From contig NIVC01000825.1 in NCBI GenBank assembly GCA_002269645.1, positions 62,001 to 126,000 on the forward strand: 64,000 nucleotides of DNA. Reading direction: 5' to 3'. The notes beneath the pieces were generated by a model. That model was not told where the DNA came from. It saw only the letters and a program-made list of their open reading frames with translations, and made no database searches. Within the stretch, counting starts at the first letter, position 1; each line of letters begins with the position of its first letter. Source of the stretch: Macrostomum lignano (taxonomy: Eukaryota). The translations under genes and the position numbers were made by a program. Positions 4,641-63,936 of this stretch are shown here, one piece after another.

Positions 4641-5369
4641 GGAGAGACAAGTGGTGAGGAGAGAGCAGAGAAGAAGTGAGGAAGAAGCGAGAGGAGGGGA
4701 GAAAGGAGGGAGAGGAAAGAGTAAAGGTGAGAAGAGGGGAGAGATGAGACAGAGGATCAATGAGAGGAGAGTAAAGAAGAGTGAGAAGAGAGTAGAGATG
4801 AGAGAGCAGAAAGAAGATGACAGAGGGTCAAGAGGAGAGGAGAGAGTAGAAAGGATAGAGAAGAGAGGAGATAAGAGGGGGAGAGAGGAGTGAGAAGAGA
4901 AGAGATAGAGATAAGAGAGGGGTGTAAGAAGAGGGGAGAAAGGAGAGATGAGATTGTAGAGATGAGACAAATGAAAGGAGAGATGAGAAAGTAAAGATGA
5001 GAGATGAAAAAGGTGAGAGGAGAGTGCAGAGAGACGAGAGAAGATAATAGAGGAGAGAGAGAGTATAGAAGAGGGAAGAGAAAAGAAGAGAGGAGTAAGG
5101 AAAGAGAGGAGTCAGAAGAGGTGAAAGAGAAGAGTACAGAGGAGATAAGTGAGAGAACGTATTAGAGAGTAAAGATGACAGATGAGAGAGCAGAGATGAG
5201 GGTGAACAGACGAGAGATGGGAGAGTAGAGAGAACAGAGGAGAGATAAGAGAGAAGAGATTACAGAAACTAGAGGAGAGAGGAGAGACAGGAGACAGAAG
5301 AGGAAATAGGAGAATGAAGAAGGGAGAGAGTAGAGAGGAGAAGAGAGATGGGAGAGGAGAGATGAGAGA

Positions 5370-5431
<62 letters not shown>

Positions 5432-5870
5432 GAGACAGAGAGAGAGAGAGAGAGAGCGCAGAGCAGAGAGAAACGAGAAGAGATAAGCGAGAAAAGATAA
5501 AAGAAGAGAAAGGAGAGATAAAAACGCAGACAAGAGAGAAGAGAGGTGAGGGAAGAGACGAGCGACGAGGGGAGAGAGAAGAGATAAAACAAGAAAAGAA
5601 ATGAGAGGAAAGAGAGAGGAAAGAGGTGAGAGAAGAGACGAGAGAAGAGGGGAGAGAGGAGAGAGAGGAGAAGAGAGAAAACGAAAAAGTAGAGAGGAGA
5701 GAGGAGAGGGGAGAGAAAAGAAGAGACAAGAGATGAGATAAGAGAGATGAAAGAGAAGAGAGATGAGGGAAGATACGAGAGAAGAGGGGAAAAGGGAGAG
5801 AGGAGAGAGGAGAGACGAGGGACGAGAGAGATGAGAGGAAACAAAGAGACGATAGAAATTTTAAAGGATC
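4560..5870. repeat. ~1.3 kb polypurine (GA-rich) low-complexity tract with a (GA)n core
   Basis: + strand almost only A/G; the overlapping ORFs are low-complexity translations. Confidence 0.9.
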
Positions 5871-12702: not shown

Positions 12703-14629
12703 ATGCCAATCAGCATTAAACTGGGCATCGCAGGCCGACTGTTTACCGCTGCGTTGGCCTGCCGGACGTTGGCAGCAACCGTGCCAACAGGTCGCCTGTT
12801 CATCCAATCAACATCTCCGGAGGTTCCACTGTACGTGTACACTCCCATACCCGAGTCCGGCCTCGAGCCCAGAAATATTCACCTGTCTTTCGGCGACAAC
12901 GAGACCTCGGTGGTGGTGACCTGGAGTACGCGCAATGACACTCAGTCGCAGGTGCAGCTAATGAGCGTGCAGCCGCCAAATGCCACAGAGAAATTGTACA
13001 ACGGCAGCTCTACGATATTTGTGGACAGCGGAACGAAAAAAGCGACGCAATATGTGCACCGAGTGACCCTGCCCGACCTCGGCTGGGGCGGTCTGTTCAA
13101 GTAATTATTTGAATATTAAAATAATGGGGGGCCGTATCCTATAGAGGGTTGTAGCCTATAATGGTTATAGATCGAGCGTCGGACTCACGACTGAAAAGGT
13201 CGGAGGTTCGATTCTCGACCCACTCGAAACAATTTTTGTCCTTGAGCAAGCTGTAAAATGGGTGCCAGCATTAGCATTGCCATTAGGAGGGGCTGTGGCG
13301 ACCTCCCCCCCCCCAGTCCTTGGACTGAACAGCCGTACGCAGCCTTCAGATGCACCGCGCAATAGCTGCGGCGGAGCTGTCGGTAATAATAACTGTAATT
13401 ATTATGATTATTATACTTACTATTATTATTAGATATCAAGTAACAAATTGTCTGGCCTGGTTTCTTTTAGGAGTCAAGAGTGTCGATAGTATCTGTATAT
13501 AGCAGTAGTATATATATCCATCTCCATAAAAGTCTCAGCTCTTGTTTTCTCTCTTATCTCTTCTTTGCCCGCCAGCTGTCGGATTTCAATATTGTTTTTC
13601 ATAATATTCAAAACCATCTCTTTAAAACCGCGCAGATACCGCTGCGGTTCGCAAGCCACCGGATGGAGCGACTGGTTCGAGTTTCGCACCCCAAAGCGTG
13701 GCTTCTCCCCACGGTTGGCCATGTTCGGCGACATGGGGATGGTGAACGCTCAGTCGCTGCCTCGGCTGATGCAAGACGCCAGCGCCGGCATGTACGACGC
13801 CATTCTGCACGTTGGCGATTTCGCCTACGACATGCAAGAGCAGGACGGCGCCACTGGCGACCAGTTCATGCAGATGATTCAGCCCATTGCGGCTCGCCTG
13901 CCCTACATGACCTGCGTCGGCAACCACGAATTCATGTACAATTTCTCGCACTATAAAAACCGATTCACCATGCCGAAGGGCTTCGGCGGAGACGGCGAGA
14001 GCATGTTCTATTCGTTCGACCTCGGCCCGGCGCACATCATTGGCATCAGCACGGAGTTTTACTTCTTTGTCGAGTACGGCGTCGACCAGTTGAAGTCGCA
14101 GTACGACTGGCTGCAGGCGGATTTGGAGCGAGCCAGTAAAAACCGAGCCGCGAGGCCCTGGATAATCATTATGGGCCACCGGCCGATGTACTGCTCCAAT
14201 GACGACGGTGACGACTGCACGTTCGGTGCGCTGTTCATGCGCGAAGGCTTCCTGGCCCGCTGGTACCCGCTGGAGCCGCTGCTCCAAAAGTACGGCGTGG
14301 ATCTCGCGCTGTGGGCGCACGAGCACACCTACGAGAGGATGTGGCCGGTGACGCGTCTGGAGGTGCGCAACGGCAGCTGGGCGGAGCCGTACTCGGAGCC
14401 CCGCGGCACTGTGCACGTCGTCACTGGGTCGGCTGGTTGTCGAGAGCGTCACGACACCTTCGGGTCGCCGATGTACTATTCTGCGTTCCGCAGCACCGAC
14501 TATGGCTACACCCGGATGCAGATCTTCAACTCCACCCACCTCAGCCTGGAGCAGGTCAGCGACGATCAGCAGGGTCGAATCATAGACCGGATCACCATTG
14601 TGCAGCACAACCACGGACCTTTTCCCTGA
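12703..14629 (+). CDS. ACP7: Purple acid phosphatase, ACP7/PAPL type (~463 aa)
   Basis: Exon 1 12703-13100 (AA|GTAATT) and exon 2 13636-14629 (CGCAG|A) give ..GGLFKYRCGS... N-terminal PAP domain (EPRNIHLSFGD..VVVTWST..HRVTLPDL) and metallophosphoesterase motifs GDMG, GDFAY, GNHE, MGHRPMY, WAHEHTYER. Confidence 0.95.
13145..13430 (+). mobile_element. tRNA-derived SINE with a CORE-like block, in the ACP7 intron
   Basis: A box TAGCCTATAATGG (13152), B box GGTTCGATTC (13205), then GTCCTTGAGCAAG-CTGTAAAATGGG resembling the two ends of the CORE domain, and an (AAT/ATT)n tail. Confidence 0.7.
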
Positions 14630-22714: not shown

Positions 22715-24350
22715 GATTTTAAGTTTTGAATTTTGTGGAGTTTTGATTTTGTGAAGTTTTGAGCTTTTGAAGTTTTGATTTTGTAAAGTTTTGATTTTGT
22801 AAAGTTTTGATTTTGTTGAGTTTTGATTTTGTTGAGTTTTGATTTTGTGAAGTTTTGAGCTTTTGAAGTTGTGATTTTGTGAAGTTTTGATTTTGTTGAG
22901 TTTTGATTTTGCGGAGTTTTGATTTTGTGAAGTTTTGACTTTGTGAAGTTTTGATTTTGTGAAGTTTTGATTTTGTGAAGTTTTGAGCTTTTGAAGTTGT
23001 GATTTTGTGAAGTTTTGATTTTGTTGAGTTTTGATTTTGCGGAGTTTTGATTTTGTGAAGTTTTGACTTTGTGAAGTTTTGATTTTGTGAAGTTTTGATT
23101 TTGTGAAGTTTTGAGCTTTTGAAGTTGTGATTTTGTGAAGTTTTGATTTTGTTGAGTTTTGATTTTGCGGAGTTTTGACTTTGTGAAGTTTTGACTTTGT
23201 GAAGTTTTGATTTTGTGAAGTTTTGATTTTGTGAAGTTTTGATTTTTTGAAATTTTGATTTTGTGAAGTTTTGAGCTTTTGAAGTTGTGATTTTGTGAAG
23301 TTTTGAGCTTTTGAAGTTGTGATTTTGTGAAGTTGTGATTTTGTGAAGTTTTGATTTTGTGAAGTTTTGATTTTGTTGAGTTTTGATTTTGTGGAGTTTT
23401 GATTTTGCGGAGTTTTGATTTTGTGAAGTTTTGATTTTGTGGAGTTTTGATTTTGTGAAGTTTTGAGCTTTTGAAGTTGTGATTTTGTGAAGTTTTGATT
23501 TTGTTGAGTTTTGATTTTGCGGAGTTTTGATTTTGTGAAGTTTTGACTTTGTGAAGTTTTGATTTTGTGAAGTTTTGATTTTGTGAAGTTTTGAGCTTTT
23601 GAAGTTGTGATTTTGTGAAGTTTTGATTTTGTTGAGTTTTGATTTTGCGGAGTTTTGACTTTGTGAAGTTTTGACTTTGTGAAGTTTTGATTTTGTGAAG
23701 TTTTGATTTTGTGAAGTTTTGATTTTTTGAAATTTTGATTTTGTGAAGTTTTGAGCTTTTGAAGTTGTGATTTTGTGAAGTTTTGAGCTTTTGAAGTTGT
23801 GATTTTGTGAAGTTGTGATTTTGTGAAGTTTTGATTTTGTGAAGTTTTGATTTTGTTGAGTTTTGATTTTGTGGAGTTTTGATTTTGCGGAGTTTTGATT
23901 TTGTGAAGTTTTGATTTTGTGGAGTTTTGATTTTGTGAAGTTTTGAGCTTTTGAAGTTGTGATTTTGTGAAGTTGTGATTTTGTGAAGTTTTGATTTTGT
24001 TGAGTTTTGATTTTGTGGAGTTTTGATTTTGCGGAGTTTTGATTTTGTGGAATTTTGATTTTGCGGAGTTTTGATTTTGTGAAATTTTGATTTTGTGAAG
24101 TTTTGATTTCGTGGAGTTTTGATTTTGTGAAGTTTTGAGCTTTTGAAGTTTTGATTTTGTGAAGTTTTGATTTTGTAAAGTTTTGATTTTGTTGAGTTTT
24201 GATTTTGTGAAGTTTTGAGCTTTTGAAGTTTTGATTTTGTTGAGTTTTGATTTTGCGGAGTTTTGATTTTGTGAAGTTTTGATTTTGTGAAGTTTTGATT
24301 TAGAGCTGGAAGTTTTGATTTAGGGAACTTTTGATTTTGAGAAGTTTTGA
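22715..24350. repeat. 16-bp satellite (TTTTGTGAAGTTTTGA), ~100 copies with a 480-bp higher-order duplication
   Basis: Lines starting 23041 and 23521 are identical (offset 480 = 30 units). Confidence 0.95.
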
Positions 24351-29338: not shown

Positions 29339-30524
29339 ATGTCGACGGACAAGCCAGAGGACGGCCTGACGGAGGAGCAGATCGAGGAATTCAGAGAAGC
29401 GTTCTCGCTGTTTGACAAAGACGGCGACGGCACAATCACGAACAAAGAGTTGGCCTCCGTGATGCGGGCTCTGGGGCAGAATCCGTCGCAGGAGGAGCTC
29501 AAGGTGAGCGCGCGGTTGAGATGTGGGATTCGAGAATCGGGTGTCACCAAAGGCGATGGGGTAATTAGAGAATGAATCATTGAAATTGGTCATTAAAGAA
29601 TTGGTCATTGGATAATTTGGTCATTGGAAAAATACATCTTGGGGAATTTGTCATTAAAGAATTGGTCATTGATGAATTGGTCATTATAGAATCGGTCATT
29701 GGGGAATGGGTCATTATAAAATTGGTCATTGGGGAATTATTCATTGCAAAATTTGGTCTTTGGGGAAACGGTTATTGGAGAATTGTTCATTGAGATATTG
29801 GTCATTAAATAATTGGTCATTTGGGACATTCGGGAATTGGCGATTATAGAATCGGTCATTGGGGAATTGGTCATACAGTGAAGTGCGACAGCCACTCTGA
29901 ATATTTAAAATCATTTCAATGGCATTTCCTCCGGATGATAAATTAACAACCTGTCGAGCTTGCAATTTCCCTGAAGTTGTCGGTCACCGGGTGCTTTTGT
30001 TTCTTGTGCCCATTTTCAATTTCCAGGTTAGCATCCTGCTTTCATCGCAGCCCGAAATTACATTCAGGGGAGTTGCATTTCCGGATTGCTCCCAGCCTCT
30101 CTCTGCTTTCCAAAACCTCTCGCTGCTTCATCAATTTGGTTTCATGAAAAATTCATTTCGCCAAGACTCTTCACCGTCACCACCCCGGGCACCCCAGGAG
30201 ATGATCAAGGAGGTGGACCAGGACGGCTCCGGCAGCATCGAGTTCGACGAGTTCCTGGAGATGATGAAGAAGCAGATGAACAGCGCAGACTCCGAGGAGG
30301 AGGTGCGTCGGGCTTTTCGCCTGTTCGACGCAGACGGAGACGGCTTCCTTAGCGCCACCGAGTTGCACCAGGTGATGCAGAATCTGGGCGAGCGACTCAC
30401 CATGGAGGAGGTCGAGGCGATGATCGGCGAGGCGGACACTGACCGAGATGGCCAGGTGAGCTTCAGCGAGTTCGCCAAGATCATGGGCGTTGGCGGCGGC
30501 AGCGGCGGCGAGTCGAGCAGCTGA
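29339..30524 (+). CDS. Calmodulin-like EF-hand protein (163 aa, 2 exons)
   Basis: Exon 1 29339-29503 (AAG|GTGAGC) and exon 2 30198-30524 (CCCAG|GAG). Four canonical EF loops: [48 protein letters not shown]. Too divergent to be canonical calmodulin; Gly/Ser tail. Confidence 0.93.
29570..29875. repeat. Degenerate ~15-bp GGTCATT minisatellite in the calmodulin-like intron
   Basis: Units like GAATTGGTCATTGGG, related to the 26195 array. Confidence 0.8.
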
Positions 30525-31922: not shown

Positions 31923-39190
<7,268 letters not shown>

Positions 39191-40265
39191 GGCTGTTGAG
39201 TTGGGTTCGAGTGTTATATAGTACATTGCTGTTAAAACTTATCTTAAATTGATCAACATGATAAAATGGACCTAAAAGTAAAAAAATTCAGACCTAAGTT
39301 TAAGAATATATGTCCTTGTTACAGTATTTACTTTTTGAGTTTTTATCTAAAAATACTAGTTGAACTGCAGTGCACGTTTTCAATGTGACCAAAACGTTTT
39401 TGATTTTTGGCATATATTATTATAATGTTTAGTCTCTAACTGTTTCTTTGTACTAATATTACTGATAACCTTTCTATTACCAAATTAATTTTAATAAAAT
39501 TTAATCTGATTGGGTCAGGAAAAAACAGGTAACATATCTGTAGCTAATTAATAAATCTATAATTAACATATGCATATGCTGGAACCAGACTAATAGTTTA
39601 CTAGAATTACAATGAGAAATATTTAAAATAAATCTATCAGAACAATAGACATCTCCATAATAGTGGCCAGATTAAATAACTACGAAAAAATAATTTGTTC
39701 ATCTAATTCTAAACAAAGAAGAGTTAAAGTCTGATACATTCGAAACAATAAAGGAAATTACATTAGTTAAATGAGTTACATTAATAAGCTGAATATATTG
39801 TGGTTGGCAGAAATTTTGCAAATTAGGCTCGTAGACGTAATTCTTCTTTAAAAAAATACAGAAGATATTTATTCATGCAGGTTAGAAATCTGAGTATTAA
39901 AAATGGAATAAAACAACCACTAACTGTTTGAAATTAATACCACCAATGAGCTACGGGAAAAAGCGGATGCACTATGCATGTCAAAATGAAACAAACATTT
40001 TTAATTGACAAAATATTCTAAACAATAAAAAACCAAAATTATTTATTTAAAAACTATTAGACAGTAAGTTTTTTTCCAAGGATGAAATTATCTGTCTACT
40101 TTAAAAATGTTTCGTGATATTGTTTGAATGTTCTAGACCATAATTATTAATAAAAATGATATTTAAACAATTGTCTAATTTAACCGCACCGCATATGCCT
40201 TAACGTGATTTGATTTAGTTGCATTCCTTTTAAACCTCAATCTAAAACAATAAATCACTTTGAAA

Positions 40266-42725
40266 ATGAAAATTCGAATCACTTTAACCGTTTTTTCGCT
40301 TCTATTTTGCGCATTTAGCCAAGGTAAGTCAGTCAGTAATCATTCTATGAAGATTTCACTCGTAAGATTACCGGTTTACGTTTCTTAAAGCTTAATAAGA
40401 TTTTACGACATTCCAGATCTAGGATGCTATTATGTGTTATTATTGGTGTTTATTACCAGCTTTGTTGAGTTAAATTATTAATTCTCTTGGAGACGGAGAA
40501 AAATTTGAAAGCCAAAAATTGATTTAAATAGCATCATCTGTGAATGTTGTAAATATATTTTAAAACTTGTACGAAAACAGTCAGGAAAAAACCAATAAAA
40601 TCCGCTCAAAAAAAATAAAAATAATTTTGAGCGGATGTACCATAGCCGTTTCAAACACATAAACAGTAAGGAATGAATGGCCGATGTTAGTCGATTTTCA
40701 ATGCCAGTAAATCCGAAATGACTAAATCTTCGCAAAACTGATTAAGACAAATTTTTAAATAATTCACGAATGCATAAATCATAAATATCCGGATGACAAG
40801 AATGTTTAAGAATTGAGCGAATTCTGTGGGCAGATAAAAATAAGCCAACAGTAGAGAGGCACATCAGATTTTTTTATCACAGATGGTAAGTACGTAGTTC
40901 GCTGTTTCGACATGCAATCTGGCAAGAAATGTGTTTAGTAAGTTAATATTATATCTATATATCTAACCAAGCAGTATTCTGCACACCTACACCTACTACA
41001 CACTGCAGTAAACTATAAAGATGACCTTGAAGCCCCACACACTATCGCTGCGCATGGAGGCAAATGCATGGCAAGATACGAGTAGTTGCGAACGTTCTAA
41101 ATATATAAAGTTTTTGGTGAAGATTTACCGCGGTCTCTGCATCTGACTAAAGCATCTCAGTATCTGTATACACTAAATAAACGCATTAAGCGCTATTCCA
41201 CACTTTTATTTATCTATGCCAGCTACAGCCTGAAGTTATACTTTATTATGACAAGAAGCATTTAAGTGGCAGATTCAATTTTCAACTTTGACTTTGTGCC
41301 AAGTCGACAACGTTGAGTGTTTCCAAGATAAAACTTTTAACTCGCTGAACATGGAAAACATCTGTAGTTCGTTGTCATTATTGCAAGCGCAGTGAGGTGA
41401 TTGGATTATGGGGTCTTTGTGGTGTGAGATGGTTGGATAATGGGGGAGGGGTTGTGGTGTGAGTTTGTTGGATAACGCTGTGCTTTGTGCAGAGAGGTGT
41501 AGATCGTGAATGCAACGGTTCAGAAAAACTATTTTAAATTTCATTGTTGGATAAAAAATGACTAAAACTGTTTTTTTCAGTAAGTACGGAATCGCGACAA
41601 GTTCTTGACAGCAGCGTATCAACAACCTCCGCCTTCACCACCGAGGGCGGCAACTTCACCAACGCCGAGGAGGGCGACAACTTCACCAACGCCGAGGAAG
41701 GCGGCAACTTCACCAACGCCGAGGAGGGCGGCAACTTCACCAACGCCGAGGAGGGCGGCAACTTCACTAACGCCGAGGAAGGCGGCAACTTCACCAACGC
41801 CGAGGAGGGCGGCAACTTCACCAACGCCGAGGAAGGCGGCAACTTCACCAACGTCGAGGAGGGCGGCAACTTCACCAACGCCGAGGAAGGTGGCAACTTC
41901 ACCAACGCCGAGAAGGGCGGCAACTTCACCAACGCCGAGGAGGGCGGCAACTTCACCAACGCCGAGGAGGGCGGCAACTTCACCACCACCAATGAGGGCG
42001 GCAACTTCACCACCACCAATGAGGGCGGCAACTTCACCACCAATGAGGGCGGCAACTTCACCACCACCAATGAGGGCGGCAACTTCACCACCAATGAGGG
42101 CAGCAACTTCACCACCACCAATGAGGGCGGCAACTTCACCACCAATGAGGGCGGCAACTTCACCACGGCCGATGAGGGCGGCAACTTCACTACCACCAAT
42201 GAGGGCGGCAACTTCACCACCGAGGGCGGCAACTTCACCACCACCGAGGAGGGCGGCAACTTCACCACCACCGAGGAGGGCGGCAACTTCACCACCACCG
42301 AGAGTGGTGGCAACTTCACCACCACCAATGAGGGCGGCAACTTCACCACCACCAATGAGGGTGGCAACTTCACCAGCACCAATAAGGGCGGCAACTTCAC
42401 CACCACCGAGGAAGGCGGCAACTTCACCACCACCGAGGAGGGCGGCAACTTCACCACCACCGAGGAGGGTGGCAACTTCACCACCACCGAGAGTGGTGAA
42501 GTCACAACAACGATGACAACCTCAAGCACCACTACGCCGTCGCCAGTGTCAAGCTTTAACGCCGGTTCCTTCGTCGGTGGAGCAGCCCTTGGCGCCGGAC
42601 TGGCTATCGTTATCTACCTGTTGTGCATCTGCGCGAAGCGTCATCGAAACTACGGAAGCGCTAGCAGCCAGGACAGAAGCTACGGTTCAGCTGGATATCG
42701 GCGACTCGGCGGGTCGACAGCTTAG
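40266..42725 (+). CDS. CD164/porimin(TMEM123)-like type I membrane glycoprotein with 32 tandem N-F-T repeats (~400 aa)
   Basis: Exon 1 40266-40323 (MKIRITLTVFSLLFCAFSQ, AAG|GTAAGT, phase 1). Exon 2 41581-42725 (TTTTCAG|TA) reads STESRQVLDSSVSTTSAFTTEGG(NFTNAEEGG / NFTTTNEGG)n..SSFNAGSFVGGAALGAGLAIVIYLLCICAKRHRNY..GYRRL.. with no stop, in frame with ORF 42513-42725. Confidence 0.88.
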
Positions 42726-43149
42726 GCTCTCGGGCGTCGATCAGAACAGCGAATATTGACTAAGGTGTCAGTAAAATGATTGCGATGCTATTCAAGATAA
42801 TTTGGCAAACTACTCTGACAAACAACGGAAAATAGCTACCAATTTTTGTTAACCCTGCCCACAGAGTCTAGAATAACCAGATGGGCCACTCAGGCATATG
42901 CTTTGTAAAACAGCTTTCTACTTTCAGTTCAGTAGCAAAGAAAATTACATAAGCTATTTTATAAAAATAAAGGCAGCTGAAATGAATTTGATAAGTTTAG
43001 AAAGAAGCCCAAGCTTGCAGGCGTAAACAACTTGCTAATTGGTTCAGCAATAATGTACATTAGCCAGTCCAGTGAAATGTACATAGCAGCTTTAGGCTGG
43101 AATTCCGAGAAAGGCAATAAAAATTTGGGCGCGGCGGGGGGGGGGGTTC

Positions 43150-43670
43150 ACAAACTCGAAATTTCACAACGTCGAAAGCACCTTCTTTCACAAGGTCGAA
43201 ATTTCACGGGGTCGAAATTTCATAACATCGAAAACTCAAATAGCAGCCACTTTCACAAGGTCGAAACTTCACAAGGTCGAAATTTCACAACATCGAAAGC
43301 TTTAGCAAAGGACTTCATAAGGTCGAAATTTCACAAGGTCGAAATTTCACAACGTAGAAAACTACTGTATGGTTCTTGATATATAAAATTTTCGACTTTG
43401 TGAAATTTCGAGCTTATGAAGTTTCGACCTTGTGAAAGTGGCTGCACTTGAGTTTTCGATGTTATGAAATTTCGACCTTGTGAAATTTCGACCTTATGAA
43501 ATATCTCTTGCTAGATTTTTCGATGTTGTGAAATTTCGACCTTGTGAAGTTTCGACCTTATGAAGTCTCTTGCTAAAGTTTTCGATGTTGTGAAATTTCG
43601 ACCTTGTGAAGTTTCGACCTTGTGAAATAATTTACTTTTCGACGTTGTGAAATTTCGACCTTGTGAAAGC
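43150..43670. mobile_element. Foldback/MITE-like element with arms made of 16-bp units (TTTCACAAGGTCGAAA)
   Basis: Left arm ~43150-43360 is the reverse complement of right arm ~43390-43670, including a ~60-bp variant block (ttcataacatcgaaaactcaa..gcagccactttcac). Short central spacer. Confidence 0.75.
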
Positions 43671-44235
43671 ACCCCGGCGGGGGTACGTATTATTGTACGA
43701 AAAGGCGCAATTAGAGGGTTTTAGCTGGGGGGGGGCAAGAGCCAATAAATGAGCCTTGGCTTTAAAAATACATTAAGATGCTTCAGTTTAACTTACTACT
43801 GAGCTGAAAGTAGCTTACATGCAAAGGTGATGAGTGGCCCATCAAGTTATTCTTGTATCGGTGGCCCTGTCTAACTGGACCGCAGCACTGATTTAGCTGG
43901 GAATCTGTCTGCACTTATTCCCGCTTTGCCAATGGAAGTTGCGTGGCAAAATTAAATGTATTGATGGTAGACTTACAGTAATAACAATGCAGTATTAGCA
44001 ATATTTCCAAATTTAATCCAATTTTGTCATGCATCAATATGTGCTACTTTAAGTAGTATTGATAAAAATGTTCGAATTGATATTTTTTCTATCAAAGGTA
44101 AAAATTACAATGAACAATGAACAATTGTTATATCCACGCGACGCCTCAGCTCGACTGCAATAAGGAGCTTATAAAATTTAATTTAGGTACTAATTGTACT
44201 CTCAATCAATTTTGCTTGATGAAGTTTGCTTTCAC

Positions 44236-45956: not shown

Positions 45957-46601
45957 ATGAAGATCTACAACAGCAGGATTTCGCTGCTGCTGATTGCTTC
46001 AATTTTTGCTGCTTTTGCTGTGCATCATTGTGAGTGCCAACTAGCAGTCTGTTTGTTTCAATTTCTGCTTATATTCGGCGCTGTTGCGAGTCTGCATTTA
46101 GTATAAAACAAAACTACTCATTTTTATACATTTTTTATTATTTTTATGTAACTTTATGTCAGGCTTTGCCAGCAGATAAACTATTCTCAATTTCATTGAG
46201 CAGGCAGCCCCCTGCCTCAGTTGGACGACTCAGTGGCACAGCTTGACGACTCGGAGTGGGATCTGAGCGCAGACAATGACACCACGGTCTCAACCGACCA
46301 GACGACTGGCTCAACAGAATCTACAAGCGGCTTCACAACGACCGGCCCATCGGACAACTCAACATCAGCCGAGCCGCAGAGCACGCCAGACAGCTCCGGC
46401 ACAACCGCTGCGCCGACGACAAGCGGCACAACGTCGAAAGCCCCGACGACGACGACGACGACGACAGCTCCGCCGTCTGGCGGCTTCGACGCCGGCTCGT
46501 TTGTTGGCGGCATCGCCCTGGGCGCTGGCCTGGTAGCCCTCGGCCTGTTCGCCTTCACGTTCTACAAACGGCGAACAGGTCGCTCCTATCAACGGATGTA
46601 A
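45957..46601 (+). CDS. CD164/porimin(TMEM123)-like sialomucin, paralogue 2 (156 aa)
   Basis: Exon 1 45957-46029 (MKIYNSRISLLLIASIFAAFAVHH, T|GTGAGT) and exon 2 46204-46601. Ser/Thr mucin stalk, FDAGSFVGGIALGAG TM motif, C-terminal YQRM (YxxPhi). Confidence 0.9.
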
Positions 46602-55900: not shown

Positions 55901-58900
55901 CTACTCAGAGCATTGTCACTCCCTCTACTCAGAGAATTGTCACTCCCTCTACCCAGAGCATTGTCACTCCCTCTACTTAGAGCATTGCCACTCCCTCTAC
56001 TCAGAGCATTGCCACTCCCTCTACTCAGAGCATTGCCACTCCCTCTACTCAGAGCATTGTCACTCCCTCTACTCAGATAATTGTCACTCCCTCTACTCAG
56101 AGCATTGCCACTCCCTCTACCCAGAGCATTGTCACTCCCTCTACTCAGAGCATTGCCACTCCCTCTACTCAGAGCATTGCCACTCCCTCTACCCAGAGCA
56201 TTGCCACTCCCTCTACCCAGAGCATTGTCACTCCCTCTACTCAGAGCATTGTCACTCCCTCTACTCAGATAATTGCCACTCCCTCTACTCAGAGCATTGC
56301 CACTCCCTCTACTCAGAGCATTGTCACTCCCTCTACTCAGAGCATTGCCACTCCCTCTACTCAGAGCATTGCCACTCCCTCTACTCAGAGCATTGTCACT
56401 CCCTCTACTCAGAGAATTGTCACTCCCTCTACTCAGAGAATTGTCACTCCCTCTACTCAGATAATTGCCACTCCCTCTACCCAGAGCATTGTCACTCCCT
56501 CTACTCAGAGCATTGCCACTCCCTCTACTCAGAGCATTGTCACTCCCTCTACTCAGAGAATTGTCACTCCCTCTACTCAGAGAATTGTCACTCCCTCTAC
56601 TCAGATAATTGCCACTCCCTCTACCCAGAGCATTGTCACTCCCTCTACTCAGAGCATTGTAACTCCCTCTACTCAGAGACTCGCACTCTCTCTACTCAGA
56701 GCATTGCCACTCCTTTTACTCAGAGACTCGCACTCTCTCTACTCAGAGCATTGTCACTCCCTCTACTCAGAGCATTGCCACTCCCTCTACTCAGAGACTC
56801 GCACTCTCTCTACTCAGAGCATTGCCACTCCCTCTACTCAGAGCATTGCCACTGTTCTACCCAACACTACCCAGACCAATCGAAACGGCGACTCACGCGA
56901 GGAAAAGTCAGGTGCGTCGACCCTAGGCGGCGAAGCAACGGAGTTCAGCCGCTGGCCGCCCTGCTGATGCGAATAGGAGCCGCTGCCGGAGTTGGACAGA
57001 TTCCGGAAATGCCCGGCTACTGACGGGTTCGGCACCGGCCCCGACTCCAGCAGCATCTGCGGCGGCGGCGGCGGCGGCAGCTGCATCGACACCATCGGAC
57101 GAGCGCCAACCCCGGCATAGTCGGCGGGCATGGCTCGAAGTTCGAAATCGGCGTGACGGCATAAATCTGGTGTGTGCTGCTGCTGCTGGAGCTGGTGCTG
57201 CAGCTGGCGATGGTGATGCTGCTGCTGCTGGAGCTGGTGCTGCAGCTGGTGCTGCAGCTGGTGGCTGGCCAGCAGGGCCGCCGTGGAACTTGGCGGCATC
57301 GACAGAGGCGACGCCGTACTGAGCATGCCGGGTCCCGGCGGCGGCTGCATCGACTGCTGCGACTGAGGAGGCGACTGCGGATGCTGCTGCTGCTGCTGCT
57401 CGGGCCCGCCGCCGATCAGGCTGGCGCTCTCTTTGGCGCCGCGGGCGCGCTGTTGGCTGTCGGCGGAGCGGCGCGGCCGGCGCTGCTGGCACATGCAGAC
57501 CACGGCTGTGGAGACGGCCAGCAGCAGCAGGGCCAGGCCGAACACGCCGCCAATCAGCAGCCACCAGCGCCGGCTGGACAGGCCGTCCGACTCGGCCCCG
57601 TCCGATAAGTCTTTGTTCGGGGGGGAGTTAGGGGAACAAAGAGTTTAAAAAGGAAATTTTAACTTACTACTCTGAAAAGTTGACAGTTGACTCACCACGC
57701 TGCAGCACGGAGTCCGTGTTGTAAACCACGCCGCCGCCTTGACCAGACGCTGCGGAGTGAGTGATTAGTGCTGAAGTATTAGGGTCACATCAATCCCAAC
57801 CAGATTCACAAGAATCCCAACCAGATTCACAAGAATCCCAACCATATTCACAAGAATCCCAACCAGATTCACAAGAATCCCAACCAGATTCACAAGAATC
57901 CTAACCAGATTCACAAGGATCCCAAACCACATTCACAAGAATCCCAACCAGATTCACAAGAATCCAACACAATCCACGGCACTCACAGTCCGGCATCATA
58001 AACTCGATCGCGTCGCTATCCGGCCCGAATCCTTCGCTATTTCCGGCTCGAACCCGGAAATAATAGTGCGTAGACGGTCTCAAACCGGTGATGACCACCT
58101 GAGTCTCTGCTGTCGGCATAGCGTGCTCGGACCCTGCCGGTTTGGCACTATTCGAGCTAACCGGCCGATAGAGCACTGTGTACTTTGTAATTTTACCATT
58201 GGGCTCGAGCGGCGGCAGCCAGGACAGCATAACGGACATTGGCAGGGTGGACCGGCTGATCTTGAGGTCGCGCGGCGGACTCCCCGGCGCCTCGGGCTCT
58301 GTTGAGAAGCTCGCCCTCAGGCTGAAGCTGGACGGCACGACGGTTTGGTCCGAGGCCAGGGCCAGGCAGCGGACCCGAACCGAATAGGCGGTGCTGGGCC
58401 GCAGGCCGACAAGTCTCGCGCTCAGCTCGCTGGTGTTCAAACGCCAGGATGACGGAGTCTGCGGCTGCGGCTGCTGCTCGGCCGTCTCCAGCGACCACTC
58501 AACCTCGTAGATTCGGCGGCCGCTAGACGGCTGGTCGGCCTGCTGATCCGTCCAGGAGACTGTCGCATTGCGGCTGCCCACCTGCGTGGCCTTCAACGCC
58601 ATTGGCACCTGCGGCAGCGGGCGTTCGGCTGAGGGAAAACCGGAGGGAAGCTGTCTGTCTGTCTGTCTGTCTGTCTAGCTGTCTGTCTACTGTCTACCTG
58701 TCTATCTACCTGGCTGCCTGTCTACCTGGCTGTCTGTCTACCTGGCTGTCTGTCTACCTGTCTATTTACCTGTCTGTCTAAATGTCTGTCCACCTATCAG
58801 TCTACCTGCCTGTCTATTTGCTTGTCTACTTGTCTGTCTACCTGTCTCTCTACCTGTCTGTCTACCTGTCTACCTGTCTGTCTATCTGTCGATCTGTCTG

Positions 58901-61900: not shown

Positions 61901-63936
61901 CCCATCTATCCCATCATCTAGATCCCATCTATCCCGTCATCTAGATCCCATCTATCCCATCATCTAGATCCCATCTATCCCGTCATCTAGATCCCATCTA
62001 TCTCATCATCTAGATCTCATCTATCCCGTCATCTAGATCCCATCTATCCTACCATCTAGATCTCATTTATCCCATCATCTAGATCCCATCTATCTCGTCA
62101 TTCAGTTAATATATATCCCATTATCAAGACCCCATTATCAAGGTCCCACCACCAAGATCCCATTATCGAGATACGATCCTCAAGATCCCATCACCAAGCT
62201 CCCACTCACTCAGATTGATGATCTGGAAGGTGTCCCGGTTGCCGGGGATTTCGCCAGCCACCCTCTCCTTAGCAACATGAGCGCCGTAGGTGATGATGTA
62301 CTTGTCTGGCAGCACGTGAGACGGCCGGATCCATGACAGCAGGATGGAGTCCGGCTTGCCAATGGGTATCAGCTCTTTAATCCGTAGCTGTTCGGCCAGC
62401 GCCTCCGTGGGGGCCGATTGGCGATTTGTAGAATCCGCCATAGTTCCGGAATTAATCGATAGGTCTGCAAATTTTGGCGCGAATTTAAATTTCAAAATGT
62501 ACTAAACTCCAGAATTGAATATCAAACAAACACTGGAAAAGTTTATAAGCCCACAATAGTTGACAAGCAGAATTTTATAGTCAAGAGTCACAGGATCACC
62601 TAAGCGTCAAGCAAGCAACTGGAGTCAGAATGTTCCACAGAGCGAACCAGTTGGAGGCAATAAACAGAGGCAGCAAATGTTTTTATTGTTATTATCATAG
62701 CATCCTGTCTAGCGGGGACACGGCAATTCTAAACTGCTGCAATGCGTTCAGCATGATTTCAAACCACGTGATTTCGTATAAAATTCGACTAGAGTTCGGG
62801 TGAAGGGGTTAGCGACAAGGTGGCAGCGCATTGAGGACTTTATTATGCTAGAAGGACCTGGGCTCGACTCCAAATGTCAGGGGCACCAAATGAGGTATCA
62901 GGTGAACCAAATCAAATGTCAGGTGAGCCAAATCAAATGTCAGGTGAGCCAAATAAGGTGTCAAGGGGGCCAAATGAGGTGTCAGGGGGAGCCAAATGAG
63001 GTGTCAGGGAGAGCGAAATGAGGTGTCAGGGGGGCCAAATGAGGTGTTAGGCGGAGCCAAATGAGGCGTCAGGGGAGCCAAATGAGGTGTCAGGGGGAGC
63101 CAAATGAGGTGTCAGGGGAGCCAAATGAGGTGTCAGGGGGGTCAAATGAGGCGTCAGGGGAGCCAAATGAGGTGTCAGGGAGAGCCAAATGAGGTGTCAG
63201 GGGGGCCAAATGAGGTGTCAGGGGGAGCCAAATGAGGTGTCAGGGGGAGCCAAATGAGGTGTCAGGGGGAGCCAAATGAGGCGTCAGGGGAGCCAAATGA
63301 GGTGTCAGGGGAGCCAAATGAAGTGTCAGGGGAGCCAAAGGTGTCAGGGGAGCCAAATGAAGTGTCAGGGGAGCCAAATGAGGTGTCAGGGGAGCCAAAC
63401 CAGATGTGGGATGGCAGATTGCTAAAATCCGAGCTCCGAACTCACAGGCGTTCCGGCGGCCAGTGTCGAACGGCAGCCAGTCGGTGAAGGCGCCAACAAA
63501 GCCGGCGGCAGTGCGAGCGGCCACGCGGACAAGAAACCGCCGCCTAGCAGGCAGGCCTGGCGGCAGCTGGCATTCAAGGCCGGCCACGGTCAGCAGCCGC
63601 TGTTCATTGTTGTCGTCGTCATCGTCAACGGTTGCAGCCGGTCGATAGGCGACAATATAGTCGGCAATCTCGGAGTCGGCCGCAGACTGTGGCGGTTGCC
63701 AGGCAACGTGCACAACGCCGTCTCGAGACCAGGCGGTGAGGCCGGACGGCCGAGCGATATTAGGTTGGCCGAGGCCGATTACTAGGCTGGCCGACGGGGA
63801 GAACCGGCCGTCCGGGCCAAGGATTCTAGCCGACAGGCGATTCGTCGAGCGGCCGATGGGCAGATCGGCCAATGTGGCCGAGCAGCTGGCCGAGGTGACG
63901 GCCGGGCCGCTGCTGGGTGGAGGCTGAAGTCGCAGT
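52977..63936 (-). CDS. fra: Frazzled/DCC/neogenin (UNC-40) netrin receptor, 3' part (5' exons beyond the window)
   Basis: Eight phase-compatible exons: 63936-63446, 62464-62210, 59473-59381, 58628-57987, 57749-57696, 57610-56897, 55655-55399, 53072-52977 (~866 aa). At least 4.5 FN3 domains, TM WWLLIGGVFGLALLLLAVSTAVVCMC, P1-like TPDLCRHADFELR, and P3 C-terminus MTKTLDGLIQDLKGLTTREFEC* (recalled fly Frazzled end LEGLMKDLSAITANEFEC). Confidence 0.93.
53165..55215. repeat. 19-21 bp minisatellite (GGGGTGTCAGAGGGA[T/C]C..) with a 179-bp higher-order repeat, last frazzled intron
   Basis: Near-identical ORFs recur at 53305/53484 and 53981/54160/54339 (offset 179). Confidence 0.95.
55675..56855. repeat. 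24-bp minisatellite (CATTGTCACTCCCTCTACTCAGAG), ~48 copies, frazzled intron
   Basis: Read directly; fills the intron 55656-56896. Confidence 0.95.
57790..57965. repeat. 21-bp minisatellite (CCAGATTCACAAGAATCCCAA), ~8 copies, frazzled intron
   Basis: Read directly. Confidence 0.9.
58650..59140. repeat. Degenerate (TGTC/CTAC) microsatellite, frazzled intron
   Basis: Read directly. Confidence 0.9.
60160..60507 (+). mobile_element. tRNA-headed SINE-like element, antisense in a frazzled intron
   Basis: A box TAGCCCAGCGG (60167) and B-box-like GGCTCGATTCC (~60210) at tRNA spacing, no closing acceptor stem, ~270-bp body ending in a short A run. Confidence 0.55.
61800..62160. repeat. ~23-bp minisatellite (ATCTAGATCCCATCTATCCCGTC), frazzled intron
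   Basis: Read directly. Confidence 0.9.
62870..63400. repeat. 21-22 bp minisatellite (CCAAATGAGGTGTCAGGGGAG), ~24 copies, frazzled intron
   Basis: Read directly. Confidence 0.93.

What the first reader, a model, noticed from the sequence alone, without database searches (positions are those of the whole stretch)
41581..42500. Coding minisatellite builds a stalk of 32 N-glycosylation sequons on a porimin/CD164-like protein
Seen: after splicing, the repeat reads (G-G-N-F-T-N-A-E-E) shifting to (G-G-N-F-T-T-T-N-E); 32 AAC-TTC-AC[C/T] (N-F-T) units were counted. All length variants are multiples of 3 (27, 24, 21 nt), and variants include synonymous changes (GAG/GAA, GGC/GGT, ACC/ACT), unlike the frame-breaking non-coding arrays nearby. 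The ORF track shows only the wrong frames (TSPTPRRAA, VVKLPPSS). Established: CD164/TMEM123 stalks are mainly O-glycosylated Ser/Thr mucin. Inference: an acidic stalk with an N-glycan site every ~9 aa is an unusual glycocalyx or lysosomal-coat design and may be length-polymorphic.
Basis: partly seen in the sequence, partly recalled or inferred. Interest (0 to 1): 0.75.

Follow-up and report, generated by a model that had tools for sequence, protein, structure and literature searches.

The report
Flatworm CD164-like gene with N-glycan-site repeat
In the flatworm Macrostomum lignano, a 27-base tandem repeat inside an unannotated copy of a CD164-type membrane mucin gene encodes 32 evenly spaced N-glycosylation sites; this is an unusual variant of a known protein family, and so far it is only predicted from the sequence.

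Summary
Window 41646-42494 (+) holds 32 in-frame units (28 of 27 nt, 3 of 24 nt, 1 of 21 nt), and each encodes G-G-N-F-T plus a variable acidic or Thr-rich spacer.

The frame runs without a stop into a unique C-terminus with the CD164-family motif F-N-A-G-S-F-V-G-G, a transmembrane helix and a basic tail. A family model built without window sequences scores it 46 bits. The best of 20,000 shuffles scores 14.

A signal-peptide exon (40266-40323, donor GTAAGT, phase 1) fits the acceptor at 41581. An ordinary Ser/Thr-mucin paralogue 3.2 kb downstream (Pfam MGC-24, 48.9 bits) has the same two-exon, phase-1 layout.

The genome is Macrostomum lignano. No public protein collection searched holds the target. 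Splicing, expression and glycosylation are untested.

The sequon codons carry no amino-acid change, while the spacers vary about 7-fold more (Fisher p = 0.013).

Two results temper the novelty:
- Other family members reach 7.2 sequons per 100 residues, against 8.0 here overall and 11.3 in the array.
- 28% of 9-residue stretches in family ectodomains already contain a sequon.

AlphaFold predicts a beta-solenoid-like rod rather than a floppy stalk, and an antisense-frame control does not fold.

Verdict: a real coding minisatellite and a new variant of a known kind, of moderate interest.

The parts
40266..40323 (+). Exon 1. ATG plus 19 codons (MKIRITLTVFSLLFCAFSQ) plus 1 base. It is signal-peptide-like: a basic n-region, a hydrophobic core, then A-F-S. 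The donor is AAG|GTAAGT, phase 1.
   Evidence: It is the only upstream ATG exon that combines a hydrophobic core, a consensus donor and phase compatibility with the 41581 acceptor. The script used the wrong sign for the phase; I corrected this by hand. The join itself is inferred, not observed.
40324..41580 (+). Intron 1 (1257 nt), GT...tttttttcAG. It is 35% GC, against 61% in exon 2. An in-frame TGA lies at 41559-61.
41581..41645 (+). Unique start of exon 2 ((V)STESRQVLDSSVSTTSAFTTE). It ends in a degenerate 'unit 0', S-A-F-T-T-E, which lacks the Asn.
41646..41969 (+). Array units 1-12, type GGNFTNAEE. Each unit has one Thr (the sequon Thr), no spare Ser or Thr, and two acidic residues.
41970..42494 (+). 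Array units 13-32, types GGNFTT(T)NE, GGNFTTTEE and GGNFTTTES. All three 24-nt units and the single 21-nt unit lie here. Each 27-nt unit carries two extra Thr (fewer in the four short units and in units 20 and 28), which are possible O-glycan sites. Unit order shows higher-order duplications (27/24 alternation; TTEE-TTEE-TTES blocks).
42495..42551 (+). Ser/Thr/Pro-rich linker (GEVTTTMTTSSTTTPSPVS), a remnant of an ordinary mucin segment.
42552..42632 (+). CD164-family juxtamembrane motif S-F-N-A-G-S-F-V-G-G followed by the transmembrane helix (FVGGAALGAGLAIVIYLLCIC).
   Evidence: Pfam MGC-24 scores 29.7 bits on an 85-aa piece (cut-off 28.5). A family HMM scores 46.2 bits against 14.1 for the best of 20,000 shuffles. 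AlphaFold places a helix at residues 329-354.
42633..42725 (+). Cytoplasmic tail AKRHRNYGSASSQDRSYGSAGYRRLGGSTA plus the TAG stop. The family's terminal Y-x-x-hydrophobic position reads YGSA here. A new G-Y-R-R-L lies at 42693-42707.
42966..42971 (+). First AATAAA after the stop, a candidate poly(A) signal 241 nt downstream.
45957..46029 (+). Paralogue exon 1 (MKIYNSRISLLLIASIFAAFAVHH plus 1 base; donor GTGAGT, phase 1).
   Evidence: The same peptide starts the public M. lignano model A0A1I8GAX9.
46204..46601 (+). Paralogue exon 2. It encodes an ordinary Ser/Thr-rich mucin ectodomain with 2 sequons, the motif FDAGSFVGG, a transmembrane helix, and a tail ending YQRM plus stop.
   Evidence: Pfam MGC-24 48.9 bits, E = 1.1e-12. 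BLASTP against the target gives 49% identity over the transmembrane module.

Best explanation
The region is the large second exon of an unannotated two-exon Macrostomum lignano gene. The gene is a tandem duplicate of the flatworm's CD164/endolyn-type sialomucin gene.

In this copy a 27-bp coding minisatellite expanded a 9-residue unit that already contained one N-X-T sequon. The expansion replaced most of the Ser/Thr mucin ectodomain with about 283 residues of (G-G-N-F-T + 2-4 variable residues) x 32.

Predicted course (inferred):
1. The signal peptide takes the chain into the ER.
2. Oligosaccharyltransferase meets an Asn-Phe-Thr every 7-9 residues as the chain emerges and glycosylates many or all of them.
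3. The product is a type I membrane protein with a strongly acidic ectodomain (53 D+E against 3 K+R) that carries N-glycans like a bottle-brush or rod. The polypeptide is about 39 kDa and could carry up to 32 glycans.
4. It acts as a glycocalyx or endolysosomal coat component.
5. The tail has lost the family's terminal YxxΦ motif and carries a GYRRL further out, so its trafficking may differ from the paralogue's.

Shown: the array, the frame, family membership of the C-terminal module, the paralogue, and sparing of the sequon codons.
Inferred: splicing, expression, glycan occupancy, location and function.
For: - Array and frame.
- The N-F-T frame continues into a family-specific C-terminus. 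Pfam MGC-24 scores 29.7 bits (cut-off 28.5) on the last 85 aa.
- A profile of the two window C-termini finds 175 proteins. Those inspected are mostly CD164-, CD164L2- or porimin-like, from Trichoplax to sharks, and the match lies at or near the C-terminus. In the alignment scanned (the 2 window fragments plus 82 hits), 81 of 84 members are Pfam MGC-24.
- An HMM built from 144 of those hits, without window sequences, scores the target at 46.2 bits. The best of 20,000 shuffles scores 14.1.
- Paralogue: MGC-24 at 48.9 bits, with the same arrangement of signal-peptide exon, phase-1 intron and one large exon.
- Codon use: GC3 is 0.91 in the N-F-T frame and 0.44 and 0.51 in the other two. The codons used are those preferred in other window genes: GGC, AAC, TTC, ACC, GCC, GAG.
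- Constraint: the 288 nt of N-F-T codons carry 2 changes, both synonymous. Heterozygosity is 0.034 in the core and 0.23 in the spacer. At 1st and 2nd codon positions, 0 of 6 are variable in N-F-T against 8 of 12 elsewhere (Fisher p = 0.013).
- All four length variants keep the frame.
[quoted passage not shown] That these lectins bind complex N-glycans is my own knowledge.
- N-glycans are functional sorting signals on rat endolyn (PMC3442411).
Against: - There is no transcript or protein evidence. The target is absent from the protein collections searched, which do hold M. lignano models, including one for the paralogue.
- The full-length product scores only 7.7 bits against Pfam MGC-24. The above-threshold score depends on which fragment is scanned: 22.3 bits for 70 aa and no hit at E <= 0.001 for 64 aa.
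- The hits used for my family HMM were picked by a profile that included the target, which is partly circular.
- Frame-keeping is weak evidence. The 3-nt loss is an ACC slip that was copied three times, so there are only about 2 independent events.
- Spacer changes are mostly non-synonymous. My rough hand count is at least 11 non-synonymous against at least 5 synonymous events, a ratio near 0.7, so the spacers show no clear purifying selection.
- The region is full of unstable minisatellites. A non-coding array here also gives sequon-rich open frames by chance.
Confidence: 0.6

Rival explanations
1. The repeat is a folded beta-solenoid or beta-sheet rod, not a disordered mucin-like stalk. In this reading Phe points inward, Asn and Thr point outward, and Gly-Gly forms the turns. 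The regular unit is then kept for folding. The glycans, if added, decorate one face. This changes the mechanism but is compatible with glycosylation.
For: - The single-sequence AlphaFold2 model has beta strands along the whole array. pLDDT is 70-82 there, mean 68.0, pTM 0.51.
- The antisense frame of the same array is an equally perfect 9-residue repeat. It gives pLDDT 35.7 and no secondary structure.
- The Foldseek top hits are all beta-solenoids: curli CsgA, tailspikes, Ag43 and hyper-glycosylated TibA.
- The conserved part of the unit is G-G-N-F-T, not only N-x-T.
Against: - No Foldseek match is significant. The best has E = 0.099 and TM <= 0.27.
- To my knowledge AlphaFold over-predicts solenoids for perfect repeats.
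- The control is Pro-rich, so it would not fold in any case.
- There is only one hydrophobic residue per 9, and the array carries about -47 net charge, which would destabilise a stacked fold unless cations bind.
- The 24- and 21-nt units would break a strict coil register.
Confidence: 0.25
2. The gene is a young, non-functional or barely expressed duplicate. A CD164-like copy was invaded by one of the genome's many expanding minisatellites. The open frame and the sequons persist only because the array is recent.
For: - The target is not in the protein collections searched.
- The family's terminal YxxΦ position is degenerate (YGSA), and the tail is extended by a YGSA-like internal duplication.
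- The spacers show no clear purifying selection.
- Tandem and simple repeats make up 15% of this genome (PMC5730564).
- Neighbouring arrays differ in copy number between two copies of the region.
Against: - The reading frame is intact for 1.2 kb, from the signal peptide to the stop.
- Splice signals are consensus.
- Preferred codons are used (GC3 0.91).
- The sequon codons are spared (p = 0.013).
- The array has three diverged subfamilies and an intermediate unit (unit 20, T-A-D-E), so it is not brand new.
Confidence: 0.2
3. The gene model differs from the one proposed. Either the array is partly or wholly spliced out, or exon 2 is joined to another 5' exon or to a trans-spliced leader. The mature protein would then lack the repeat or the signal peptide.
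For: - The public model of the paralogue (A0A1I8GAX9) joins its signal-peptide exon to an internal acceptor inside exon 2.
- 38.8% of M. lignano genes are trans-spliced (PMC5730564).
- GT and AG dinucleotides occur inside the array.
Against: - The acceptor at 41581 has the only long pyrimidine tract.
- The first in-frame ATG in exon 2 is at 42513, after the array. A leader-initiated or exon-2-only product would be a 70-aa fragment without a signal peptide.
- As I recall, flatworm leaders end in AUG. Joined at 41581, such a leader would read ATG-TAA.
- Exon 1 is phase-compatible with the acceptor.
Confidence: 0.08

Closest known systems
CD164 / endolyn / MGC-24 sialomucin (Pfam PF05283)
   Same: - Type I topology.
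- Juxtamembrane F-[DN]-x-x-S-F-x-G-G motif, then a transmembrane helix, then a short basic tail with N-Y.
- A heavily glycosylated ectodomain that also carries N-glycans with a sorting role (PMC3442411).
- A bona fide family member lies next door.
   Different: - There is no Cys-containing compact domain between mucin segments; the ectodomain has no Cys.
- The ectodomain is 329 aa, against roughly 100-180 in relatives.
- It is a regular 32-unit array with 11.3 sequons per 100 aa and very little Pro (2 residues).
- The terminal YxxΦ motif (YHTL in vertebrates, YQRM in the paralogue) reads YGSA, and the tail is extended by 23 residues.
Porimin (TMEM123) and CD164L2
   Same: They have the same C-terminal module and are retrieved by the same profile. 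One example is a hit ending ...YRTIDEHEAII.
   Different: These are vertebrate paralogues. The flatworm genes cannot be assigned to either, so 'porimin-like' means no more than 'CD164 family'.
VNTR mucins, such as MUC1 and, among flatworms, the Schistosoma polymorphic mucins with 9-residue repeats (from my own knowledge)
   Same: A coding minisatellite, in one large exon for most mucins, builds a glycosylated extracellular domain that is probably variable in length.
   Different: Those repeats are Pro/Thr/Ser-rich and O-glycosylated. Here the conserved element is an N-X-T sequon, Pro is nearly absent, and units 1-12 have no spare Ser or Thr.
Densely N-glycosylated coat proteins: LAMP-1/2 and viral glycan shields (from my own knowledge, roughly 1 site per 20 residues)
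   Same: The idea of a protective coat made of N-glycans. A YxxΦ-type tail motif also suggests endolysosomal cycling.
   Different: The predicted site density is about twice as high (1 per 8.8 residues), and the sites sit in a repeat rather than on folded domains. There is no homology.
Hyper-glycosylated beta-helical adhesin passenger domains, such as TibA and Ag43 (Foldseek hits)
   Same: The predicted model is a repetitive beta-solenoid rod that would carry sugars at regular positions.
   Different: The matches are not significant. Those proteins are bacterial, their glycosylation chemistry is different, and there is no sequence relationship.

Membership tests
CD164 / MGC-24 family (PF05283) | Conserved module: juxtamembrane F-[DN]-x-x-S-F-x-G-G motif, transmembrane helix, and basic tail with N-Y. 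| tested here: met
   Pfam scores 29.7 bits (cut-off 28.5) on the last 85 aa. The family HMM scores 46.2 bits against 14.1 for the best shuffle. F9, F14, G16 and G17 are invariant across 84 sequences. Caveat: the full-length protein scores only 7.7 bits and the 70-aa piece 22.3 bits.
CD164 / MGC-24 family (PF05283) | Type I membrane topology: an N-terminal signal peptide and a single C-terminal transmembrane helix. | tested here: inconclusive
   The transmembrane helix is clear. The signal peptide depends on an inferred splice. No dedicated signal-peptide predictor was available.
CD164 / MGC-24 family (PF05283) | [quoted passage not shown] | tested here: not met
   The target ectodomain has no Cys. 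The paralogue has one Cys. This feature may be vertebrate-specific.
CD164 / MGC-24 family (PF05283) | A tyrosine-based YxxΦ sorting motif at the extreme C-terminus. | tested here: not met
   The homologous Tyr is followed by G-S-A, and the tail continues for 23 more residues. A GYRRL lies 5 residues from the end. The paralogue meets this feature with YQRM plus stop.
CD164 / MGC-24 family (PF05283) | Heavy N- and O-glycosylation of the mature protein. | not testable with these tools
   Only sequons (32) and Ser/Thr counts (95 in the ectodomain) can be read from the sequence.
VNTR (PTS-repeat) mucins | Tandem repeats rich in Pro, Thr and Ser. | tested here: not met
   The ectodomain has 79 T, 16 S and only 2 P. 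Units 1-12 have no Ser or Thr apart from the sequon Thr.
VNTR (PTS-repeat) mucins | Array length is polymorphic between alleles. | not tested
   The second copy of the region that I could fetch (L001) ends before the gene. Non-coding arrays do differ between the two copies (50.1 against 37.1 units, 28.2 against 30.2, 21.2 against 24.2).
RTX beta-roll nonapeptide repeats (GGXGXDXUX) | Gly at positions 1, 2 and 4, Asp at position 6, and a large hydrophobic residue at position 8 of a 9-residue unit. | tested here: not met
   The unit is G-G-N-F-T-N-A-E-E. Only the G-G and the period of 9 agree. There was no HemolysinCabind hit at E <= 10.

The most novel reading that the evidence does not exclude
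This could be a metazoan 'N-linked mucin'. In that reading, a CD164-family membrane protein has had its ectodomain rebuilt by a coding minisatellite into 32 evenly spaced, occupied N-glycan sites, about one per 9 residues. By my recollection that is roughly twice the density of LAMPs or viral glycan shields. The ectodomain may fold as a glycan-decorated beta-solenoid rod. It would contribute to the PHA-E/PHA-L-positive glycocalyx of M. lignano, and its length would vary between genome copies.
Probability: 0.25. Interest if true: 0.65.

Novelty: new variant of a known kind. Interest (0 to 1): 0.4.

Why it matters
If the protein is made and most sites are used, it would show how densely the eukaryotic oligosaccharyltransferase can glycosylate a natural substrate. 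It would also show that a mucin-like coat can be built from N-glycans rather than O-glycans, and that minisatellite expansion can swap one glycosylation chemistry for another within a gene family.

The sequence would also be a compact natural scaffold for glycoengineering. M. lignano has RNAi, transgenesis and lectin stains, so the prediction can be tested directly.

If the gene is not expressed, it is simply one more expanded repeat in a repeat-rich genome.

Tried and rejected
**Searches that found nothing**
- Word-indexed protein searches with the full product and with the C-terminal 81 aa gave no hits.
- Exact look-ups gave nothing on record for the 70-aa ATG ORF, the phosphatase ORF and P0121.
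I did not try them in any other tool.
- The Rfam scan of the window found nothing.
- The phage DNA search found nothing; it was a poorly chosen collection for a eukaryotic window.
- The PDB sequence search of the C-terminus gave only chance transmembrane hits.

**Ideas tested and dropped**
- RTX-type calcium beta-roll: rejected on the motif and on Pfam.
- Alternative first exons between 39300 and 41580: the only other candidate is 40424-40463, which has a poor donor and no basic n-region.
- Frame preservation as strong evidence of coding: downgraded, because there are only about 2 independent indel events and half of the array periods here are multiples of 3.
- A sequon-dense open frame as evidence in itself: rejected, because the non-coding 16-nt array at 22721-24350 gives 23-26 sequons in three frames.

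**Literature**
Searches for N-sequon tandem repeats or an 'N-mucin' found no precedent. No paper links M. lignano with CD164. These searches are word-based and incomplete.
Full report
**1. What is in the sequence**

Tandem Repeats Finder reports one array at 41643-42491: period 27, 32.0 copies, 90% matches, score 1136. I split it at the invariant AACTTCAC. This gives 32 units between 41646 and 42494: 28 of 27 nt, 3 of 24 nt and 1 of 21 nt. The 15-nt core GGCGGCAACTTCACC (up to 2 mismatches) occurs 32 times in the window, all of them here. Shuffled sequence gives 0.12 expected.

In the frame that starts at 41583, each unit reads G-G-N-F-T plus a spacer. The spacers are NAEE (units 1-12), then TTNE/TNE, TTEE and TTES. 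Unit 20 (T-A-D-E) looks like an intermediate between types. The unit order shows block duplications (27/24 alternation; TTEE-TTEE-TTES occurs twice).

The ORF tool lists only the other + frame and one minus frame. The N-F-T frame has no ATG/GTG/TTG between the stop at 41559-61 and 42513.

**2. Is it coding?**

An open frame across a repeat proves nothing here. Many arrays in this window are open in several frames. The non-coding 16-nt array at 22721-24350 even gives 23-26 N-X-S/T in each of three minus-strand frames. A period that is a multiple of 3 is not distinctive either, since 21 of the 44 array periods I tallied share it.

The decisive evidence is what the frame connects to. Downstream it runs without a stop through a Ser/Thr/Pro linker into SSFNAGSFVGGAALGAGLAIVIYLLCIC-AKRHRNY... 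and ends at TAG 42723-25.

Support for the C-terminus as a CD164-family module:
- The last 85 residues score 29.7 bits against Pfam MGC-24 (PF05283), whose cut-off is 28.5. The whole protein scores only 7.7 bits, the 70-aa piece 22.3 bits, and a 64-aa piece nothing at E <= 0.001. Pfam alone is therefore borderline.
- A profile of the C-termini of the target and its neighbour was run against 1.84 billion representatives. It found 175 proteins at E <= 0.001, with the match at or close to the C-terminus in nearly all.
- Their sequences include vertebrate CD164 (...[37 protein letters not shown]), porimin-like, mollusc and Trichoplax proteins. I scanned an alignment of the 2 window fragments plus 82 of these hits, and 81 of its 84 members are Pfam MGC-24.
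- An HMM built from 144 of these hits, without any window sequence, scores the target C-terminus at 46.2 bits. The best of 20,000 shuffles scores 14.1. There is some circularity, because the hits were selected by a profile that included the target.

Codon use agrees with coding in this frame. GC3 is 0.91 in the N-F-T frame and 0.44 and 0.51 in the other two. The codons used (GGC, AAC, TTC, ACC, GCC, GAG) are the preferred ones in four other coding stretches of the window. Exon 2 is 61% GC, while the proposed intron is 35%.

**3. The 5' end**

The N-F-T frame is closed by TGA at 41559-61, so an upstream exon is needed.

The stretch 40266-40323 encodes MKIRITLTVFSLLFCAFSQ plus one base, followed by AAG|GTAAGT. 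The acceptor tttttttcAG|TA at 41580/41581 completes a GTA codon in the right frame.

I scanned all ATG-initiated hydrophobic exons between 39300 and 41580. The only other candidate has a poor donor and no basic n-region. The script in that call had a sign error in the phase, which I corrected by hand.

Independent support comes from the neighbour (section 4), which has the same layout: a signal-peptide exon ending in phase 1, one intron, and one large exon.

The join is still an inference. No RNA data could be reached with these tools.

**4. The paralogue and the organism**

The paralogue lies 3.2 kb downstream, at 45957-46029 plus 46204-46601. It encodes a 156-aa protein with an ordinary Ser/Thr-rich ectodomain (2 sequons), the motif FDAGSFVGG, a transmembrane helix and a tail ending YQRM-stop. 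It scores 48.9 bits (E = 1.1e-12) against MGC-24. It is 49% identical to the target over the transmembrane module.

The top representative hit, P0121, is UniRef A0A1I8GAX9, named 'Secreted protein, Macrostomum lignano'. It starts with the paralogue's exon 1 but joins it to an internal acceptor.

The purple-acid-phosphatase gene at 12703-14626 is 100% identical, over the 309 residues queried, to BOX15_Mlig013175g4 on contig NIVC01000618.1 of GCA_002269645.1. That contig aligns to the window at 97-99% identity with indels. The window is therefore another copy or another assembly of the same M. lignano region.

In this genome, simple and tandem repeats make up 15% and large blocks are duplicated (PMC5730564).

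The target protein itself is absent from every protein collection searched. It is unannotated.

**5. Is the sequon under constraint?**

'32 sequons' is one sequon copied 32 times. A random 9-mer from family ectodomains contains a sequon 28% of the time, so finding one in the unit is not surprising.

The pattern of variation is more informative:
- The 288 nt of N-F-T codons carry two changes, both ACC to ACT.
- Mean per-site heterozygosity is 0.034 in the G-G-N-F-T core and 0.23 in the spacer.
- At first and second codon positions, 0 of 6 are variable in N-F-T against 8 of 12 elsewhere (Fisher p = 0.013).

This fits selection on the sequon, or on the whole G-G-N-F-T motif. It is modest evidence, because the units are not independent. 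Spacer changes are mostly amino-acid-changing, so the spacers look free to vary.

**6. What the product would be**

- The mature polypeptide is about 39 kDa.
- The ectodomain is 329 aa with 79 T, 64 G, 56 N, 50 E and 34 F. It has 53 acidic and 3 basic residues, 2 Pro and no Cys.
- Units 1-12 have no Ser or Thr apart from the sequon Thr, so that part can only be N-glycosylated.
- Most of units 13-32 carry one or two extra Thr or Ser each, and the linker is Ser/Thr-rich, so O-glycans are possible there.
- Sequon density is 8.0 per 100 aa overall and 11.3 in the array. The densest of the 150 relatives listed has 7.2, a shark CD164.
- Rat endolyn has 8 sequons and 40 predicted O-sites, and its N-glycans direct apical sorting (PMC3442411). 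The family already uses N-glycans, and this member takes that to an extreme in a regular array.
- From established knowledge, N-X-T with any X except Pro is a good acceptor. I did not open the papers on closely spaced sites listed, so I make no claim from them about tolerance of close spacing.
- The tail differs from the family. The conserved Tyr of YxxΦ is followed by G-S-A, and the tail goes on for 23 residues with a GYRRL near the end.

**7. Stalk or rod?**

AlphaFold2, run without an alignment, predicts beta strands throughout the array. pLDDT is 70-82 there, mean 68.0, pTM 0.51, with a transmembrane helix at residues 329-354.

As a control I used the antisense frame of the same DNA, an equally perfect 9-residue repeat (VVVKLPPSS). 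It gives pLDDT 35.7 and no structure.

Foldseek finds only beta-solenoids, none significant (best E = 0.099, TM <= 0.27).

I treat this as a live rival to a disordered stalk. Two cautions apply: AlphaFold tends to build solenoids from repeats, and the control is Pro-rich. The idea of an RTX-type nonapeptide roll fails on the motif and on Pfam.

**8. Context and length variation**

The M. lignano glycocalyx is strongly labelled by PHA-E and PHA-L (PMC6410801). To my knowledge these lectins bind complex N-glycans. That fits an N-glycan-rich surface coat but says nothing about this gene.

The array's own polymorphism could not be tested, because the second copy I could fetch ends about 17 kb before the gene. 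Five non-coding arrays in the shared part differ in copy number between the two copies, and three do not. Length variation of the coding array is therefore plausible by analogy only.

**9. Verdict**

This is a real coding minisatellite in an unannotated CD164-family gene of M. lignano. Still untested are the splice, expression, glycan occupancy and polymorphism. The claim of unusualness holds for the regular, dense, Pro-poor N-sequon array, but it is softened by the family's existing N-glycosylation. It is a new variant of a known kind, and I score interest at 0.4.

Noticed in passing
window 45957-46601 (+): A second, ordinary CD164-family gene lies 3.2 kb downstream. It has a signal-peptide exon, a 174-nt phase-1 intron, a Ser/Thr mucin exon and a tail ending YQRM. 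The public model A0A1I8GAX9 uses a different internal acceptor, which gives it a frame-shifted middle section.
   Followed up: yes
window 43139-43675: About 400 nt after the target's stop, two blocks of the same 16-nt unit lie in opposite orientation (TTTCACAAGGTCGAAA and TTTCGACCTTGTGAAA). The arms reach 111 nt at 95% complementarity. This is a foldback or palindromic minisatellite.
   Followed up: partly
window 22721-24350 (minus-strand frames): This non-coding 16-nt array (about 102 copies) is open for 526-597 codons in three frames, and each frame has 23-26 N-X-S/T sequons (NQNFTKSKL...). Sequon-rich ORFs can therefore arise by chance in this genome.
   Followed up: partly
window 894-24879 versus L001 (NIVC01000618.1:1-20601): The window is 97-99% identical to the public Mlig_3_7 contig but is not the same sequence. 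It has about 4.6 kb extra between 1521 and 6145, including the GA-rich block at 4761-5841. Several minisatellites differ in copy number: 50.1 against 37.1, 28.2 against 30.2, 21.2 against 24.2, and 5.5 against 6.5.
   Followed up: partly
window 32517-34767 (-): Exons with a GPR158/179 extracellular domain lie here (56 bits and 26 bits). The 21-nt array at 33530-34132 sits between them inside an open frame. I did not check whether it is intronic or coding. Related unassigned ORFs lie at 37802-38221 and 38531-39226.
   Followed up: partly
P0149 (92-aa protein from an ENA contig of 548 bp): This CD164-family fragment has the same FNAGSF variant of the motif and four short sequon-bearing repeats (SPNMTT, SSNMTT, SPNTT, SNMTT). 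It is a small-scale parallel to the array studied here. The organism is unknown.
   Followed up: no
window 30201-30521 (+), 57904-58608 (-), 63243-63872 (-), 12703-14626 (+): Other genes in the window are an EF-hand protein, two fibronectin type III exons and a two-exon purple acid phosphatase (ACP7-like).
   Followed up: partly
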